A program made the position numbers and the translations under genes. The notes under the pieces were generated by a model, which saw only the letters and a list, made by a program, of their open reading frames with translations, made no database searches and had not been told where the DNA came from. Below, in pieces: positions 53,834 to 59,564 of a stretch of DNA of 64,000 nucleotides (the stretch's first letter is position 1; each line of letters starts with the position of its first letter). This DNA comes from Heterodontus francisci (lineage: Eukaryota), in contig NC_090387.1 in NCBI RefSeq assembly GCF_036365525.1, positions 90,189,691 through 90,253,690 of the forward strand. Reading direction: 5' to 3'.

Positions 53834-53888
53834 ATGTTCGCGAGTGTTGTACTTCAGTGCCTCTCTGTTTTGGGGATCATTTTCACAG
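53834..53888 (+). CDS. IgSF VJ-C1 receptor gene, exon 1 (signal peptide)
   Basis: MFASVVLQCLSVLGIIFT plus phase-1 donor ACAG|GTAACA; in frame with exon 2. Confidence 0.82.
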
Positions 53889-54049
53889 GTAACAGTTCCC
53901 GCGATACCTTACTTTCTCATTAAATATGGTAGTTATTTAACTTTCCGTTGATATAAAATGTTTCATTTTCCTTTGTACATATTTCCTGATTCCCTTATTC
54001 TCGCGCTTTTCCTTCTGTAATACAATTTCATTATCATATTTTCCGATAG

Positions 54050-54370
54050 CTTGCGGCGAAACTTCAGTCAAAGTGAATCAGTACCCTGAGAGTAGGAGCA
54101 TAAACCTGGGAAGAAATGTTTCCTTTCGCTGCACGCTTCCCATGTTTCAAGACGGCCCACCTGTGAATGTCTACTGGTGGAAGGAGGGTGATAATCAATA
54201 TCTAAACACAGGACAGGATGACAGAAAATTAATTAGCGTTAAGACTGGATTCAAAGCCGTTCTTTGGATAATCAATGTGAGTGTACAAGACGCAGGAGTA
54301 TACTATTGTACTGTCACTCATCGAGGCAAAATCGTTGGAAACGGAACGGGATCCAATTTAGTTGTAACGG
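54050..54370 (+). CDS. Exon 2: V-set Ig domain with germline-joined J-like G strand
   Basis: Acceptor ..tttccgatag. VNQYP..[37 protein letters not shown]. Donor G|GTAAGT, phase 1. Confidence 0.93.
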
Positions 54371-55143
54371 GTAAGTATAAAAACAACGAATGAGATCCCT
54401 GTAACTGTAATATTTCACAATTCGGAACATTTATTGACTGTGCTTCGAAGGATTCACATCCATTGTTTTAGCATGCATACATTCAAATTGCACCTGTGAC
54501 GGCTGCAGTTATTTTCTGATATGAATCACAATATTTCAGCAATATTGATCAAAACAAGGATTATCACTTATTTGTTTGATTCCCAAAATATACAGGAAAC
54601 GGTATGCCGCAAACTATTGAATTAAAATTGCAGTATCATTTACGGAGGTGTATATCTCGACAGTGTTAGATACAAGCGCGGATCTGCCGCTCTGAGCACA
54701 GATATTGCCCTATTTGAGATTTATTTTGCCTCCGTTACGCGAGACTGACTGTTTCTATCTGGATTCAGATTTCCGTAGCTCTAATTTAATAATCTATATG
54801 TCAGGATCTTTGAAAGGGCATATTACTGACAGTTAAATTTTACATTCTGTAGCTTGAGCCTCCCATCCCATTTTTCTTCATGATTTTCACCTGTAAATAA
54901 GGTATCATCCTGGACCTTGGCGCCAGTGTCCCTCTAGTTTGATAAATTATATTTTCTCATCAGTTCTTATGTTCAACAGAGTTCGCAGCGGTACCGCGAA
55001 ACAGGGGAGCAACGCAAATTACATCCCGCTCAATTTTCTTTCCCATTCGAATAGAAAATTGGAAGAGCTGTGAAACGGGCGACCCACTCGGTATCATCCG
55101 TTTTTTCTTGCCCGGCGGTAACATTGCAATTACCGCCGAAATA

Positions 55144-55498
55144 GGGGCGGCACAGTGGCGCAGTGGTTCGCACCGCAGCCTCACAGCTCCAGGGATCCGG
55201 GTTCGATTCCGGGTACTGCCTGTGTGGAGTTTGCAAGTTCTCCCTGTGTCTGCGTGGGTTTTCTCCGGGTGCTCCGGTTTCCTCCCACAAGCCAAAAGAC
55301 TTGCAGGTTGATAGGTAAATTGGCCATTATAAATTGTCACTAGTATAGGTAGGTGGTAGGGAAATATAGGGACAGGTGGGGATGTTTGGTAGGAATATGG
55401 GATTCGTGTAGGATTGGTATAAATGGGTGGTTGATGTTCGGCACAGACTCGGTGGGCCGAAGGGCCTGATTCAGTGCTGTATCTCTAAATAAATAAAT
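55144..55498 (+). mobile_element. HE1-type V-SINE in intron 2
   Basis: Full head, core and tail, ending (TAAA)n. Confidence 0.88.
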
Positions 55499-55938
55499 AT
55501 AAGGCAATATTGGAGCAAATGACCAAAAGCTTGATCAAAAGAGGTAAGTTTTAAGGAATGGCTGAACGGAAGAAAGTGAGGAACGATGTGGAAAGGTTTA
55601 GGGATGGAATTTCAGAGTTGGAGCCCAGGCAGTTGAAGGCACGGTAACCAATGGTGGAGTGAGTAAAAACAGTGCTGTATCTCTAATCTAATCTAAAAAC
55701 TTGTGAAAATCTGTTTGCGATGCAACTACTGACAGCGCAAAGTGAACATCAATGCAGTGTCACAAAGACTCACCCTCTACCCCCACATCCCCTCCCGCCA
55801 CCCCCCAGCCCCGACCCCCCTCCGCCCACCGCCACGACCGCGACCTCCTCCAACGTGTAGTTAGAAATGGGCTGAAACAAAACGTCCGTGAACCTTGATT
55901 GATGTCCTATTACGTTATTTTCCTCCATTTTCTTTTAG

Positions 55939-56247
55939 TTCCGCCAACTCCAGTGAAAATTAAATATCAGCAACCTGAGGATTCATCTGTTTCTCTAACT
56001 GTTGCGTGCGTGACATCTCCCTTTTATCCAGAGAGTATCAGCTTCACTTGGTATAAGGATGGCAACAAAACTACAACTGGGATAAGTAACGTTGTTGAAC
56101 CCAACACCGACGGACTATATGAAGCCTCCAGCCGCTTGCAAGAGACGCAGTTTGTCCCGCCCGGAACTGTTTATATCTGCCTGGTCTCTCACAGTAGCCT
56201 CCAAATTTCAGCCATGGCCATTTACGTTGTCATCTATCACAGCACAG
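55939..56247 (+). CDS. Exon 3: C1-set Ig domain
   Basis: Acceptor ttttcttttag. VPPTP..TVACVTSPFYPESISFTWYKDG..NTDGLYEASSRL..YICLVSHSSL. Donor CAG|GTGAGA, phase 1. Confidence 0.93.
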
Positions 56248-56279
56248 GTGAGATTTCAGATAAAATCGGAGAATTGTAC

Positions 56280-57340
56280 ATTATCGAAAGAGGTCATTTG
56301 GCCTGGCGTGCCTGTGCGGCCTCTTTGAAAGAGCTGTCCAGTTTAGTCCCCATAACTCTGCAGATTAAACCCCTTCAAGTAACATGTCCAATTGCCTTTT
56401 GAAAATTCCTGTATAAATTGCTTCCAACAATCTTTCAGCTCGTGTATTCTGCATCTCAACACCCCCGTGAGAAAAGAATTCCCCTCAAAAACCGTCTCGT
56501 CCTTTTGCCAATAGTTTTAAACCTATGACTTTCGGCTATCGACCCATTTCTTCAGAGGAATGTTTCTTCCTACTTGATTCATTAAAACCCTTCATAATTT
56601 TGAATATTTCTCTTAGGTATCCCCTTAATTTTCTGTGTTCTAATGAGAGCATTCCTAGCTTCGCCAATATCTCCACGTGGCTGAAGGCTCTCCTCCTTGT
56701 TACAGCCAGTAAATCTCGTCTGTATTCTCTGCAAGACCTTGACATTCTTTTAAAATGCGGTGCCCAGCATTGTGCACAATAATCTAACTGAGAACTAACT
56801 GGAGATGTGTAAACTTTAGCATGGCTTCCATGTTTTTGCATCCAATGCCTCTATTCAGAAAACTAATTACCGCACAAGGTTCCTTGACCGACGTATTAAC
56901 TTGCTCTGCCACCTTCAAAGATGTGTAGATATGCACCCCGAGCTTCTCCTGATTTAGTATGCCCCTCAAAATGTCACTATTTCCATTATACTACCTCTCC
57001 ATATTGTTTCACCCAAAGTGCACACTTCAGACTTATCCACATTGAATTGCACTTACCATTCGTCTGCCCATTTCCTCACTGTATTTTCTCCTAAAGTCTG
57101 CTACTACCCTTCTCACCATTTACTACGTTACTAATTTTCCATCATTAACATTCTTGAAATTGTACTCCCTATATCACGTCCCGGTAATTTATGCATATCA
57201 GGTAAAGTATTAGCCCTGATACTGATCCCTGAGGGAATCCCACTGCATATTTCTCTCCTGTCAAAAATCTACTCTCTGCCACCTATCACTTAGCAAATTG
57301 CATACCCAAGGTACCTCGGTGCATTAAATCCAATATGTCA
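56280..57340 (-). mobile_element. Old CR1 fragment in intron 3
   Basis: ORF 56536-56841 has QLDYCAQCWAPHFK..LAKLGMLSLEHRKLRG. Confidence 0.75.
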
Positions 57341-57850: not shown

Positions 57851-57965
57851 ATGTCAATCGCAACAACTGACTGAAAAACATTCGAATTATCTATTTTCAG
57901 GGAATTGTCTTATTGAATTGAACAGCATACAGTTTCGATTTATATGTTTAATTTACATCTTGTAG

Positions 57966-58076
57966 GTGGTGATGTCACCCGTTACTTGCTGATTTCTGCA
58001 TCTGCAGGGGGTGTGTTCGTATTATTGGTGCTCAGCCTCGTCATTGTGAAGCCATGTGTCTCAAAGAAAAACAACG
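57966..58076 (+). CDS. Exon 4: transmembrane segment
   Basis: Acceptor catcttgtag. GGDVTRYLLISASAGGVFVLLVLSLVIVKPCVSKKNN. Donor G|GTAAAA, phase 1 at both ends. Confidence 0.85.
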
Positions 58077-58304
58077 GTAAAAAATAATTCAGGTTTTTTT
58101 TTACTAACGTTAACACAAATTTCAAAGAGACAATAGTTAGCCTGTCCCACAGGAACAAAGGTGATTGCTGAACACAGATGTTTTCCTGGGATTGAAAATA
58201 AATGAGACTCTACACAGGCACGCCAGGGTACCATTGTAGGGGTAGATTCAAATTTCTGAAATAGAGTGGAATATTCCAAGGTCTCCAGTGACTGACGGAG
58301 ATTC

Positions 58305-59083
58305 GTGGTGGAATTGTATGGGTTTGCTAATGACTGGAATGGAGGCGGGGGCCATTAAATATCGACGGAAGGCTGTGGGTGGACTGCCCCTCACCTTCCC
58401 ATCGCCATGCGATTTTTTGGGGCAGGAAAGGCCTTCCCAACCAAAGGCCAATTGAAGCCAGTAAGTGCCCAATTAACAGCCAATTAACAGCCAATTAAAG
58501 GCCATTTCCCAACGCCACTGGTATTCTACCAGAGGTTGGGGGGGGGGGGGGGGTGCCACAAAATGGGAAGATCCCAGTAAAACAAGATGACCTCCCTGCA
58601 GTCTTTGGGGGACCCTCCTCTGTGGGCAATCTGTAGCTCACAGAGCGTCCCCAGTGGGAAAGGTCACCCATCCATGAACAGCCCTCTCCCCTCTCCACCC
58701 GCCCCCCCCCCCCCCCCCCCACACACACACCCCCTTCTCTTCCCCTCGCCAGTACCTGCCGGACTAGCCCTGGAGACCCTACCACTCTGACTGGGGCCTT
58801 GGTCTCCAGCAATCAGCCGCTTGTCGTACCAGCAGTGGTCACTGCTCCTAGTGGTGATGCCAGCACTACTGAGCTGCCGGCCCTCTGATTGGCTGATAGA
58901 TCTTGGGGGTGGATCCCGATCCTGAAAGGGACGGGAGCCACGGCCCAGGCAGTTAATTGCCTGAGTGTCCTTAAATAGAGACAGAGGGCGGGGGGGGGGG
59001 TGGTCTCCAAAGGGCTGAGGCGAGGTTCCGCTCTCCTTTTAGGCCTGGCGTCGGGACCCCAACCGGCTCCATGAAATTTAGCC
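58305..59083. mobile_element. GC-rich non-autonomous DNA element (Harbinger-type MITE-like) in intron 4
   Basis: GC-rich insert with C/G homopolymers, ending gaaatttagccc. Termini are degenerate. Confidence 0.4.
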
Positions 59084-59366
59084 CTCGGACTCAATGGCTG
59101 CTTTGTTGAAAAATCTCCTTCCGCCATTCGGGCAATGAACGTAAAATTTTGGGTCGTGCCAGTGCGACATTTCAATCAGACTCGCGCTACCTAACTGGCA
59201 TCTGAACAATCTTGCTTCTATTGTCAAAAGTGATCATAAACCAAGCAATTCTGAACAACAAATGTGGTATCTAGGTCCTGTCATAGTTTACGTTGAATCT
59301 ACCGGAAGTGTCTTTCTAAGCCGAGTATATATTAAATGTAACGTCTTAAACTTCACTCGTCAACAG

Positions 59367-59410
59367 GAGTGCGGAACGATGGTGAAAGATCCAACTCTCC
59401 TAAACAGCAG
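59367..59410 (+). CDS. Exon 5: cytoplasmic
   Basis: Acceptor cactcgtcaacag. GVRNDGERSNSPKQQ. Donor CAG|GTAGGT; phase 1 to phase 0. Confidence 0.7.
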
Positions 59411-59519
59411 GTAGGTTTTCATAATTCGTACTAATGTATTTCAAATGTAAATAAATTCATAACGGAGTTGTACTCTATTAAATTCAATAATTGATTACGT
59501 TTAATTCCCTGCTGCACAG

Positions 59520-59564
59520 ATTCATGCTGAATTCAGCGCTTATGCAACAGACAGTTCTATGTAG
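59520..59564 (+). CDS. Exon 6 candidate: IHAEFSAYATDSSM* (gives a 294 aa protein if terminal)
   Basis: Acceptor ttccctgctgcacag, phase 0; stop at 59562-59564 at the edge of a CR1 insertion. Confidence 0.5.
   Translation: MHAEFSAYATDSSM

What the first reader, a model, noticed from the sequence alone, without database searches (positions are those of the whole stretch)
53834..59564. Non-rearranging antigen-receptor-like gene: germline-joined VJ domain plus C1 domain
Seen: an intact L-V-C1-TM-cyt exon chain with consistent phase-1 junctions. The V exon carries its own J-like G strand ([22 protein letters not shown]) and I see no RSS after it. The second domain has C1-set hallmarks (C..FYP, W, N.DG.Y, Y.C.V.H.SL). 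Known: C1 domains are largely restricted to Ig, TCR, MHC, tapasin, SIRP and B7-like proteins; single-exon VJ domains occur in NKp30 (GTGNGTRLVV) and SIRP; VJ-C1 genes have been proposed to resemble the pre-RAG ancestor of antigen receptors. Inference: an uncharacterised shark VJ-C1 receptor of that class.
Basis: partly seen in the sequence, partly recalled or inferred. Interest (0 to 1): 0.85.

Follow-up and report, generated by a model that had tools for sequence, protein, structure and literature searches.

The report
Horn shark SIRP-like V-C1 inhibitory receptor
This is a real, intact horn-shark gene for a cell-surface immune "brake" receptor, built like one antibody light chain fixed to the membrane without gene rearrangement; it is already in RefSeq as "SIRP-alpha-like" and belongs to a large cartilaginous-fish family that no paper I could find describes.

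Summary
The exon chain is real. Leader, V(J), C1, TM and a first cytoplasmic exon (53834-59410, +) have GT/AG sites and phase-1 junctions. They are 100% identical to Heterodontus francisci XP_067905935.1 ([quoted passage not shown], that is SIRP-alpha-like).

The V exon carries its own J motif (GTGSNLVV) and no RSS. The second domain meets every C1-set criterion tested.

RefSeq joins exon 5 to an exon at 63951, which runs off the window into a tail with ITIM/ITSM-like tyrosines (LTYAAV, TEYAQL).

The gene is one of at least 12 paralogs on one horn-shark chromosome. The family is found in sharks, rays and chimaeras only, carries inconsistent automatic names, and has inhibitory and Arg-TM (activating-type) forms.

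Orthology to SIRP is not shown. Per V-C1 unit, Ig light chains, SIRP-alpha and UrIg2 score about equally. The V domain is nearest IgNAR and TCR V domains. Whole-protein language-model features favour SIRP-alpha.

Best reading: a SIRP-alpha-type inhibitory receptor. The mechanism is inferred and expression was not tested. This scan has already reported the family several times on other DNA of the same chromosome.

The parts
53834..53888 (+). Exon 1: start codon and most of the signal peptide (MFASVVLQCLSVLGIIFT + 1 nt). A 161-nt intron follows, giving a split leader.
   Evidence: identical to the N-terminus of XP_067905935.1
54050..54370 (+). Exon 2: the end of the leader plus a V-type Ig domain with a built-in J-like G strand ([22 protein letters not shown]). 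There are 58 residues between the two cysteines and three N-glycosylation sequons. A GT donor follows directly and there is no RSS.
   Evidence: (V-set 6e-9, Ig_3 2e-10)
55939..56247 (+). Exon 3: C1-set Ig domain (C-13 residues-W, FYP, CLVSH).
   Evidence: C1-set 3.8e-13; HLA-DP/DQ membrane-proximal domains, IgNAR C3, Z about 14
57966..58076 (+). Exon 4: short stalk, transmembrane helix without an internal charged residue (YLLISASAGGVFVLLVLSLVIV), and juxtamembrane KPCVSKKNN.
   Evidence: (helix 230-256)
59367..59410 (+). Exon 5: first cytoplasmic exon (VRNDGERSNSPKQQ). It enters in phase 1 and leaves in phase 0.
   Evidence: exact in P0154/P0005
63951..64000 (+). Start of the next cytoplasmic exon (SMQGTADVMAPYAELE...), cut by the window end. 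The RefSeq protein continues with LTYAAV and TEYAQL outside the window.
59520..59564 (+). It has a plausible acceptor, but it is not used in the RefSeq models and its peptide has no counterpart in relatives. It is most likely intronic.

Best explanation
The locus is an intact gene (RefSeq XP_067905935.1 and isoform X2, Heterodontus francisci) for a type I membrane receptor. Its parts are a signal peptide, one germline-joined V(J) domain, one C1-set domain, an uncharged TM helix and a cytoplasmic tail with tyrosine motifs of ITIM/ITSM type.

It belongs to a large multigene family restricted to cartilaginous fish. The family is built and diversified like mammalian SIRP paired receptors, with inhibitory forms carrying tails and activating-type forms with an Arg in the TM segment and short tails.

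Inferred mechanism:
1. The membrane-distal V domain binds a fixed, probably host-encoded, ligand through its CDR-like loops.
2. Src-family kinases phosphorylate the tail tyrosines.
3. SHP-1/SHP-2-type phosphatases are recruited and damp activation of the cell that carries the receptor.

Shown here: the gene structure, the domain types, identity to the annotated product, the family's range, and the presence of the motifs. Inferred: the ligand, the cell type, phosphatase recruitment, and homology (as opposed to likeness) to SIRP.
For: - Exons and splice phases.
- 100% identity to XP_067905935.1.
- Pfam V-set and C1-set.
- C1 criteria of Hatherley 2009 (PMC2785349) all met.
- AlphaFold model with pLDDT above 90 over most of residues 30-220. 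Domain 2 matches MHC II, IgNAR C, CL and TCR C domains at Z 13-14.4.
- Tail motifs APYAEL, LTYAAV and TEYAQL, conserved across the family as xPYAALD / RTVYAQTK / KLTYAALD / STEYAQLR.
- All family hits are cartilaginous fish, with a gap from E 1.8e-36 to 2.4e-5.
- Within the gene's own clade (SH-aLRT 99), Leucoraja P0008 (Arg in TM, short tail) and Amblyraja P0009 (long tail) have near-identical ectodomains. Hemitrygon P0003 and Mobula P0170 form a similar pair.
- ESM Atlas whole-protein features put SIRP-alpha clusters first (0.97 and 0.96; 208 and 201 of 256 features).
- SIRP-alpha signalling through ITIM and SHP-1/2, and the alpha/beta pairing, are described in PMC12975943.
Against:
- SIRP has two C1 domains; this protein has one.
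- Per V-C1 unit the family profile scores Ig lambda 66.0, SIRP-alpha d1-d2 64.0 and UrIg2 V-C1 60.1 bits, while whole light chains score 82-84.
- SIRP is absent from the top 60 hits of the V-only profile.
- In this copy the family's RTVYAQ tyrosine is His (RTAHAQ).
- The RefSeq C-terminus (…EWTLFTWNRKPRDIGVPCGTRCICVHI) departs from the paralogs' …QRADVI(Y/S)TEPK ending. The distal tail may be decaying or mis-modelled.
- Only APYAEL lies inside the window, and its -2 position (Ala) is not canonical for an ITIM.
Confidence: 0.8

Rival explanations
1. The family is not SIRP kin. It is a separate surviving lineage of the non-rearranging VJ-C1 receptor stock from which Ig, TCR and UrIg arose, and it acquired an ITIM tail independently.
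For: - Best single-domain V matches are shark IgNAR V (55.0 bits) and TCR V (46-52 bits). Neither SIRP nor NKp30 is in the top 60.
- The C1 exon's best PDB hit is UrIg2.
- The top Foldseek hits are Ig light chains, with one TCR chain among them.
- It has a split leader with a 161-nt intron and a single-exon VJ domain, as described for UrIg and UrIg2 (PMC12227049).
Against: - The score differences between light chains, UrIg2 and SIRP are small, and the UrIg2 totals sum three domains of 21-32 bits each.
- Whole-protein features favour SIRP-alpha.
- The paired inhibitory/activating layout is the SIRP pattern, and the tail motifs recall SIRP-alpha as I remember them.
- By this scan's unchecked notes, the cluster lies on a different assembly piece from the MHC findings.
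- The CDR3-like loop is conserved among paralogs.
Confidence: 0.15
2. It is a member of the shark NCR3 (NKp30) family, or of the PRARP family described in chicken.
For:
- The V domain is short, with 58 residues between the cysteines and a weak C'-C'' region in the model. I recall that NKp30 is also of a shortened, I-like type.
- NKp30 aligns to domain 1 at Z 13.4.
- As I remember it, PRARPs are non-rearranging VJ-containing receptors. The MBE 2023 paper names them beside NKp30.
Against: - NKp30 has no C1 domain.
- NKp30 is not among the top 60 PDB hits of the V exon or the V profile, and Z 13.4 ties with dozens of V and I domains.
- No bird or other tetrapod V-C1 protein appeared among the exhaustive HMMER hits that I named. 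The turtle and lungfish hits are multi-V proteins and the teleost hits are NITR-like.
- The NCR3 and PRARP papers and sequences could not be reached, so this remains untested.
Confidence: 0.05
3. The copy is a decaying duplicate or pseudogene: intact over the ectodomain but no longer a working inhibitory receptor.
For: - One conserved tail tyrosine is lost (RTAHAQ).
- The RefSeq C-terminus is aberrant compared with the paralogs.
- The family shows birth-and-death evolution with dead copies nearby, according to earlier unchecked notes.
- The introns are full of retroelements.
Against: - All six exons seen in the window are open with canonical splice sites.
- Every invariant family residue is kept.
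- Its end branch in the tree is short (0.055), and its closest paralog, P0165, also has the RTAH change.
- The ITIM LTYAAV and TEYAQL are retained.
Confidence: 0.07

Closest known systems
SIRP-alpha / SIRP family (mammalian paired receptors; PDB 2wng, 4i2x)
   Same: - A V domain with a J-like G strand followed by a C1-set domain.
- An uncharged TM segment and a tail with several YxxL/V/I motifs in inhibitory forms.
- Sister forms with a basic TM residue and a short tail.
- A multigene cluster.
- The RefSeq automatic name, and ESM feature search ranks SIRP-alpha first.
   Different: - One C1 domain instead of two.
- The V profile does not rank SIRP V among its best 60 PDB matches.
- SIRP-alpha d1-d2 scores no better than Ig lambda or UrIg2.
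- Ligand unknown; CD47 binding untested.
- Orthology and synteny untested.
UrIg and UrIg2 (elasmobranch non-rearranging antibody-like genes; PMC12227049, PDB 9dmx)
   Same: - A single-exon VJ domain, a split leader and C1-type constant domains.
- Specific to cartilaginous fish.
- UrIg2 is the top PDB hit of the C1 exon.
   Different: - UrIg has three C domains and is secreted; UrIg2 has nine or more C domains.
- Both are disulfide-linked dimers linked to the MHC or the antigen-receptor complex.
- This gene has one C1 domain, no stalk cysteine and an ITIM tail, and sits in a large paralog cluster.
- Per-domain scores are only 21-32 bits.
Ig light chains and TCR chains
   Same: - The V-C1 two-domain layout, J motif and phase-1 exon structure.
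- Light chains are the best whole-chain profile and Foldseek matches.
   Different: - No RSS and no separate J segment.
- Membrane-anchored with a signalling tail of its own.
- The CDR3-like loop is fixed among paralogs.
NKp30 (NCR3)
   Same: - A non-rearranging VJ-type domain with a GNGT-containing G strand.
- A short V domain.
   Different: - NKp30 has no C1 domain and, from my memory, signals through a charged TM residue.
- It is not a top sequence match.
[quoted passage not shown] 2019, cited in PMC10751288)
   Same: A non-rearranging VJ-bearing IgSF receptor discussed as an antigen-receptor relic. Further details rest on my memory only.
   Different: It could not be compared, because neither the paper nor the sequences were reachable.

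Membership tests
IgSF C1-set domain | (F/Y)(F/Y/H)P at the start of the BC loop (Hatherley 2009) | tested here: met
   FYP in ...CVTSPFYPES...
IgSF C1-set domain | Exactly 13 residues between the B-strand Cys and the C-strand Trp | tested here: met
   C-VTSPFYPESISFT-W
IgSF C1-set domain | xVxH after the F-strand Cys | tested here: met
   C-LVSH; V, S and H are invariant across 21 family members
IgSF C1-set domain | Profile and fold match to bona fide C1 domains | tested here: met
   Pfam C1-set 3.8e-13, 50 bits against a cutoff of 21. Model residues 123-225 match HLA-DP/DQ membrane-proximal domains, IgNAR C1/C3, CL, TCR C and CH3 at Z 13.7-14.4.
Non-rearranging VJ-type V domain | J motif GxG(T/S)xLxV encoded in the same exon as the V domain | tested here: met
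   GTGSNLVV at the end of exon 2, with a GT donor 4 nt later. The motif is conserved in the family.
Non-rearranging VJ-type V domain | No recombination signal sequence at the V end | tested here: met
   No heptamer-12/23-nonamer (1 mismatch allowed in the heptamer, 3 in the nonamer) in 53800-54900 on either strand. The same pattern gives 7 chance matches in the whole window.
Non-rearranging VJ-type V domain | Full V-set strand complement (C' and C'') | tested here: inconclusive
   Only 58 residues lie between the cysteines. The model shows strand C, one bridge, then D. The best fold matches mix I-set domains (NCAM d1), IgNAR V, CD79b and TCR V. Pfam V-set scores 36.5 bits and Ig_3 41.4 bits.
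SIRP family | Ectodomain of one V domain plus two C1 domains | tested here: not met
   One C1 exon only, and no further Ig exon anywhere in the window. One skate relative has two near-identical C1 copies (P0009).
SIRP family | Inhibitory member with cytoplasmic ITIMs; activating partner with a basic TM residue | tested here: met
   LTYAAV and TEYAQL in the RefSeq product, and APYAEL in the window. Arg-TM, short-tail relatives lie in the same clade (P0008, P0003). Phosphatase binding itself is not testable here.
SIRP family | Closest sequence relatives are SIRPs (orthology) | tested here: inconclusive
   Per V-C1 unit: Ig lambda 66.0, SIRP-alpha 64.0, UrIg2 60.1 bits. The V profile does not list SIRP. 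ESM features rank SIRP-alpha first.
SIRP family | Binds CD47; conserved synteny with the tetrapod SIRP locus | not testable with these tools
UrIg / UrIg2 | VJ domain followed by three or more C1 domains; disulfide-linked homodimer; MHC or antigen-receptor-complex linkage (PMC12227049) | tested here: not met
   The protein has a single C1 domain, no cysteine in the stalk, and a TM segment plus ITIM tail. Linkage was not tested. The homodimer prediction gave no answer.
NKp30 / NCR3 | Single VJ-type domain without a C1 domain | tested here: not met
   A C1 exon is present. NKp30 is absent from the top 60 sequence matches. The shark NCR3 family sequences could not be obtained.
PRARP | Sequence grouping with chicken PRARP1/2 | not testable with these tools
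   No PRARP sequence or paper could be reached.
Rearranging antigen receptors (IgL, TCR) | Separate V and J segments flanked by RSS | tested here: not met
   V and J are in one exon and there is no RSS.

The most novel reading that the evidence does not exclude
The cartilaginous-fish V(J)-C1 paired-receptor family, of which this gene is an inhibitory member, is not a SIRP offshoot. It is an independent survivor of the pre-RAG VJ-C1 receptor stock, sister to Ig, TCR and UrIg. On this reading the ancestral antigen-receptor-like molecule was a single-chain, ITIM-signalling innate receptor with paired activating forms.
Probability: 0.15. Interest if true: 0.8.

Novelty: new member of a known kind. 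Interest (0 to 1): 0.42.

Why it matters
V-C1 proteins outside Ig, TCR and MHC are few: SIRP, tapasin, UrIg and UrIg2. They are central to arguments about what the RAG transposon invaded.

This gene's family is large and spans sharks, rays and chimaeras. It is non-rearranging, shows paired inhibitory and activating forms, and is visible only under contradictory automatic names. It is therefore a ready comparative set for two questions:
- Is SIRP-type signalling ancestral to antigen receptors, or derived from them?
- What do innate paired receptors do in the oldest jawed vertebrates?

This particular gene adds one clean inhibitory member and a corrected gene model. It does not add a new kind.

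Tried and rejected
- **Read laying.** My local RSS regex ran over the whole window file with a pattern unrelated to them.
- **The look-up of sequencing runs.** It returned four runs of one study with 5-14% of the words, guessed to be RNA.
- **Complex prediction.** A homodimer of residues 20-232 gave no answer (score 0.00). This is no evidence either way.
- **Joined exons.** Searches were made exon by exon by reference, and whole-protein searches used the RefSeq protein that the tools returned (P0154).
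Rejected.
- **RSS after the V exon.** None found.
- **Paralogous Ig exons elsewhere in the window.** None found.
- **Non-chondrichthyan relatives of the V exon.** Turtle multi-V ITIM proteins, lungfish multi-V SIRP-V-like proteins and teleost NITR-like proteins. None is V-C1, so none is an ortholog.
- **Papers.** The shark NCR3 family, Flajnik 2012 and PRARP papers are not held. Searches for a shark SIRP paper found none.
- **Tail-only ESM search.** It gave C1orf162 and LST1 clusters at a noise-level score of 0.79-0.81. This is a lead only.

Full report
**Observation.** Reading 53500-60000 and translating each proposed exon by reference confirms an open exon chain on the + strand.

| Exon | Coordinates | Length | Content |
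|---|---|---|---|
| E1 | 53834-53888 | 55 nt | leader |
| E2 | 54050-54370 | 321 nt | V domain |
| E3 | 55939-56247 | 309 nt | C1 domain |
| E4 | 57966-58076 | 111 nt | stalk and TM |
| E5 | 59367-59410 | 44 nt | first cytoplasmic exon |

Every exon has an AG acceptor with a pyrimidine tract and a GT donor, and E1 to E5 are joined in phase 1. Intron 1 is only 161 nt, and the V exon begins with the last leader residues, so the leader is split.

The V exon ends in ...[35 protein letters not shown] fits the J consensus GxG(T/S)xLxV and is followed four bases later by the splice donor. A scan for heptamer-12/23-nonamer signals found none in 53800-54900 on either strand; the same pattern gives 7 chance matches in the whole window.

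**Domain types.** Pfam scores the V exon as Ig_3 (2e-10) and V-set (6e-9, full-length match). It scores the second exon as C1-set (3.8e-13, 50 bits against a cutoff of 21). Hatherley et al. 2009 (PMC2785349) use three sequence criteria to separate C1 domains from other Ig domains, and all three are met:
- FYP at the BC loop.
- Exactly 13 residues between the B-strand Cys and the C-strand Trp.
- xVxH after the F-strand Cys.

An AlphaFold model of the annotated protein, built with a 21-sequence family alignment, has pLDDT above 90 over most of residues 30-220.
- Domain 2 (residues 123-225) aligns to HLA-DP and HLA-DQ membrane-proximal domains, IgNAR C1 and C3, CL, TCR C and CH3 at Z 13.7-14.4.
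- Domain 1 aligns equally well to NCAM d1, CD79b, IgNAR V, TCR V-delta and NKp30 at Z 13.4-14.4.
- The V domain is short, with 58 residues between the cysteines and a weak C'-C'' region in the model.
- The best Foldseek hits for the two-domain unit are Ig light chains, with one TCR chain among them (E about 1e-15).

**What the gene is.** Searching with the ORF that holds the C1 exon found elasmobranch proteins at 59-69% identity. An exhaustive HMMER search with the V exon found more. Cluster look-up showed that the window's exons are letter-for-letter Heterodontus francisci XP_067905935.1, 388 aa, named 'tyrosine-protein phosphatase non-receptor type substrate 1-like isoform X1', that is SIRP-alpha-like. 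Isoform X2 is N-terminally shorter. The window is therefore horn shark, and the gene is already annotated.

Whole-protein searches used this tool-returned RefSeq protein (P0154).

**The 3' end.** The RefSeq product continues after ...SNSPKQQ with SMQGTADVMAPYAELE... That sequence is encoded from 63951, behind an AG acceptor, to the window end. The product then continues outside the window with ...RTAHAQ...KLTYAAVS...STEYAQLR...

The finding's end coordinate and short tail are therefore wrong. The real tail carries an ITIM (LTYAAV) and an ITSM-like motif (TEYAQL). Another first-reader note on this window had pointed to downstream tyrosine exons, and I confirmed the first of them.

**Family.**
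- A word-indexed search with P0154 returned 51 proteins, all from cartilaginous fish.
- A search with a 21-member profile (alignment A1) returned 65 proteins down to E 1.8e-36. Every one that carries a source name is from a cartilaginous fish. The next hits, at 2.4e-5, are salmonid butyrophilin-like proteins. Only the 8000 candidates sharing the most words were scored, so distant relatives may have been missed.
- At least 18 species of sharks, skates, rays and a chimaera are represented.
- At least 12 distinct horn-shark products lie on the same 99.65-Mb record.
- The automatic names are contradictory: SIRP-alpha-like, SIRP-beta-1-like, Ig lambda-1-like, tapasin-related-like, CD276 homolog, B7-H6-like, MHC class I- or II-like, TCR-beta-like.
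- Family invariants include the two Cys pairs, both Trp residues, the J glycine, FxP and VSH.

A maximum-likelihood tree of the V-C1 region (60 sequences) puts the window gene in a clade of 13 elasmobranch sequences (SH-aLRT 99) that contains sharks and batoids. Inside it, six horn-shark paralogs group together (SH-aLRT 90). The nearest is P0165, at 91% identity.

In that same clade, Leucoraja P0008 has an Arg in the TM segment and a short tail, while Amblyraja P0009 has a long tyrosine tail. Their ectodomains are nearly identical. Hemitrygon P0003 (Arg in TM) and Mobula P0170 (long tail) form a similar pair. This is the signature of paired inhibitory and activating receptors. The window gene has an uncharged TM core and so is of the inhibitory type.

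The CDR3-like loop ([11 protein letters not shown]) is almost invariant among the six horn-shark paralogs, while it varies across the whole family. That fits a fixed ligand for each subfamily and does not fit antigen-receptor-like diversity.

**Which known family?** The sequence evidence does not single one out.

| Query | Hits (bits) |
|---|---|
| C1 exon alone | UrIg2 67.6 (three domains of 19-25), then IgA and IgM, SIRP-alpha 44 |
| V exon alone | generic I-set and V-set hits only |
| Family profile, best stretch (V-C1 unit; the lambda match covers only the end of V plus C) | Ig lambda 66.0, SIRP-alpha d1-d2 64.0, UrIg2 V-C1 60.1 |
| Family profile, whole light chains | 82-84 |
| V-only profile, single domains | shark V-NAR 55.0, TCR 46-52, CD79b 44.6; neither SIRP nor NKp30 in the top 60 |
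| C1-weighted profile | UrIg2 83.3 (three domains), IgM 64.1, lambda 60.7, SIRP-alpha 51.8, SIRP-gamma 49.7 |

In contrast, language-model features of the whole protein put two SIRP-alpha clusters first (0.97 and 0.96; 208 and 201 of 256 features), ahead of kappa-like clusters at 0.94. The tail motifs of the family (xPYAALD, KLTYAALD, STEYAQLR) recall the SIRP-alpha tail as I remember it. I could not obtain a SIRP tail sequence from the tools to test this.

The non-chondrichthyan proteins nearest to the V exon are turtle multi-V ITIM proteins, a lungfish multi-V protein with SIRP-V-like domains, and teleost NITR-like proteins. None is V-C1.

My reading is that the gene works like SIRP-alpha and may be distant SIRP kin, but membership in the SIRP family is not shown: it has one C1 domain instead of two, and orthology is inconclusive. 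UrIg and UrIg2 (PMC12227049) share the single-exon VJ domain, the split leader and C1 domains. They differ in the number of C domains, in being secreted or dimeric, and in linkage. NCR3 and PRARP could not be tested because neither papers nor sequences were reachable.

**Mechanism (inferred).** Ligand binding by the V domain would be followed by tyrosine phosphorylation of the tail, recruitment of SHP-1/2-type phosphatases and damping of cell activation. This is the mechanism established for SIRP-alpha (PMC12975943). Arg-TM paralogs would act as the activating counterparts.

Caveats:
- This copy has lost one conserved tail tyrosine (RTAHAQ).
- Its annotated C-terminus differs from the paralogs' ending.
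- Expression was not tested.

**Limits.**
- The homodimer prediction gave no answer.

**Earlier notes of this scan.** Notes from this scan describe the same family at several places on the same assembly piece, from 13.8 Mb before this window to 2.3 Mb beyond it. They reach the same reading: SIRP-like, paired, restricted to cartilaginous fish, and with no paper. I reached the RefSeq identity and the family's range independently, before reading them, and I treat them as agreement, not as support.

**Verdict.** The finding is a real, intact and correctly recognised VJ-C1 receptor gene with a mis-called 3' end. It is an already annotated inhibitory member of an unpublished SIRP-like family of cartilaginous fish that this scan has already reported. 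It is of moderate interest as one gene. The family has more interest for the question of antigen-receptor origins.

Noticed in passing
window 63951-64000, and beyond the window in P0154: The RefSeq C-terminus of this gene (…IEKKEWTLFTWNRKPRDIGVPCGTRCICVHI) departs from the paralogs' …IEKQRADVI(Y/S)TEPK ending. The conserved RTVYAQ tyrosine is His in this copy and in its 90%-identical paralog P0165. The last exon may be lost, read through or mis-modelled.
   Followed up: partly
P0001 (Heptranchias ortholog) and P0154 residues 232-388: The TM segment and tail of the ortholog carry a precomputed Pfam hit to PF27946 (C1orf162 family). The tail-only ESM search names C1orf162 and LST1 clusters at 0.79-0.81, which is noise level. 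From memory, LST1 is an ITIM adaptor next to NCR3 in the human MHC. This is a lead on the origin of the tail module.
   Followed up: partly
window about 55140-55480 (intron 2): A SINE-like element with a tRNA-like head.
   Followed up: no
window 50886-52550, 44199-45362, 3684-4664 (+), 43641-44327 (-): Reverse-transcriptase ORFs (Pfam RVT_1: 1.4e-44, 3.6e-24, 1.9e-14, 4.4e-06). The two at 43-45 kb lie inside the endogenous retrovirus that another note places at 37922-49794. Upstream of the receptor gene the window is mostly retroelements, with no other Ig exon.
   Followed up: partly
window 59570-61450 (inside the 4.5-kb last intron): A LINE-like reverse-transcriptase remnant on the + strand. 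Its ORF at 60081-60401 has no Pfam hit at 1e-3.
   Followed up: partly
window 58540-58560, 58700-58725, 58985-59000 (intron 4): Long poly-G and poly-C tracts and a CA-rich stretch inside a repeat-like segment.
   Followed up: no
P0009 (Amblyraja radiata) compared with P0008 (Leucoraja erinacea): The skate relative P0009 has two nearly identical C1 domains in tandem, a recent exon duplication that gives a SIRP-like V-C1-C1 layout. P0018 of Callorhinchus has V, TM and tail with no C1 domain. The number of C1 domains is therefore plastic in the family.
   Followed up: partly
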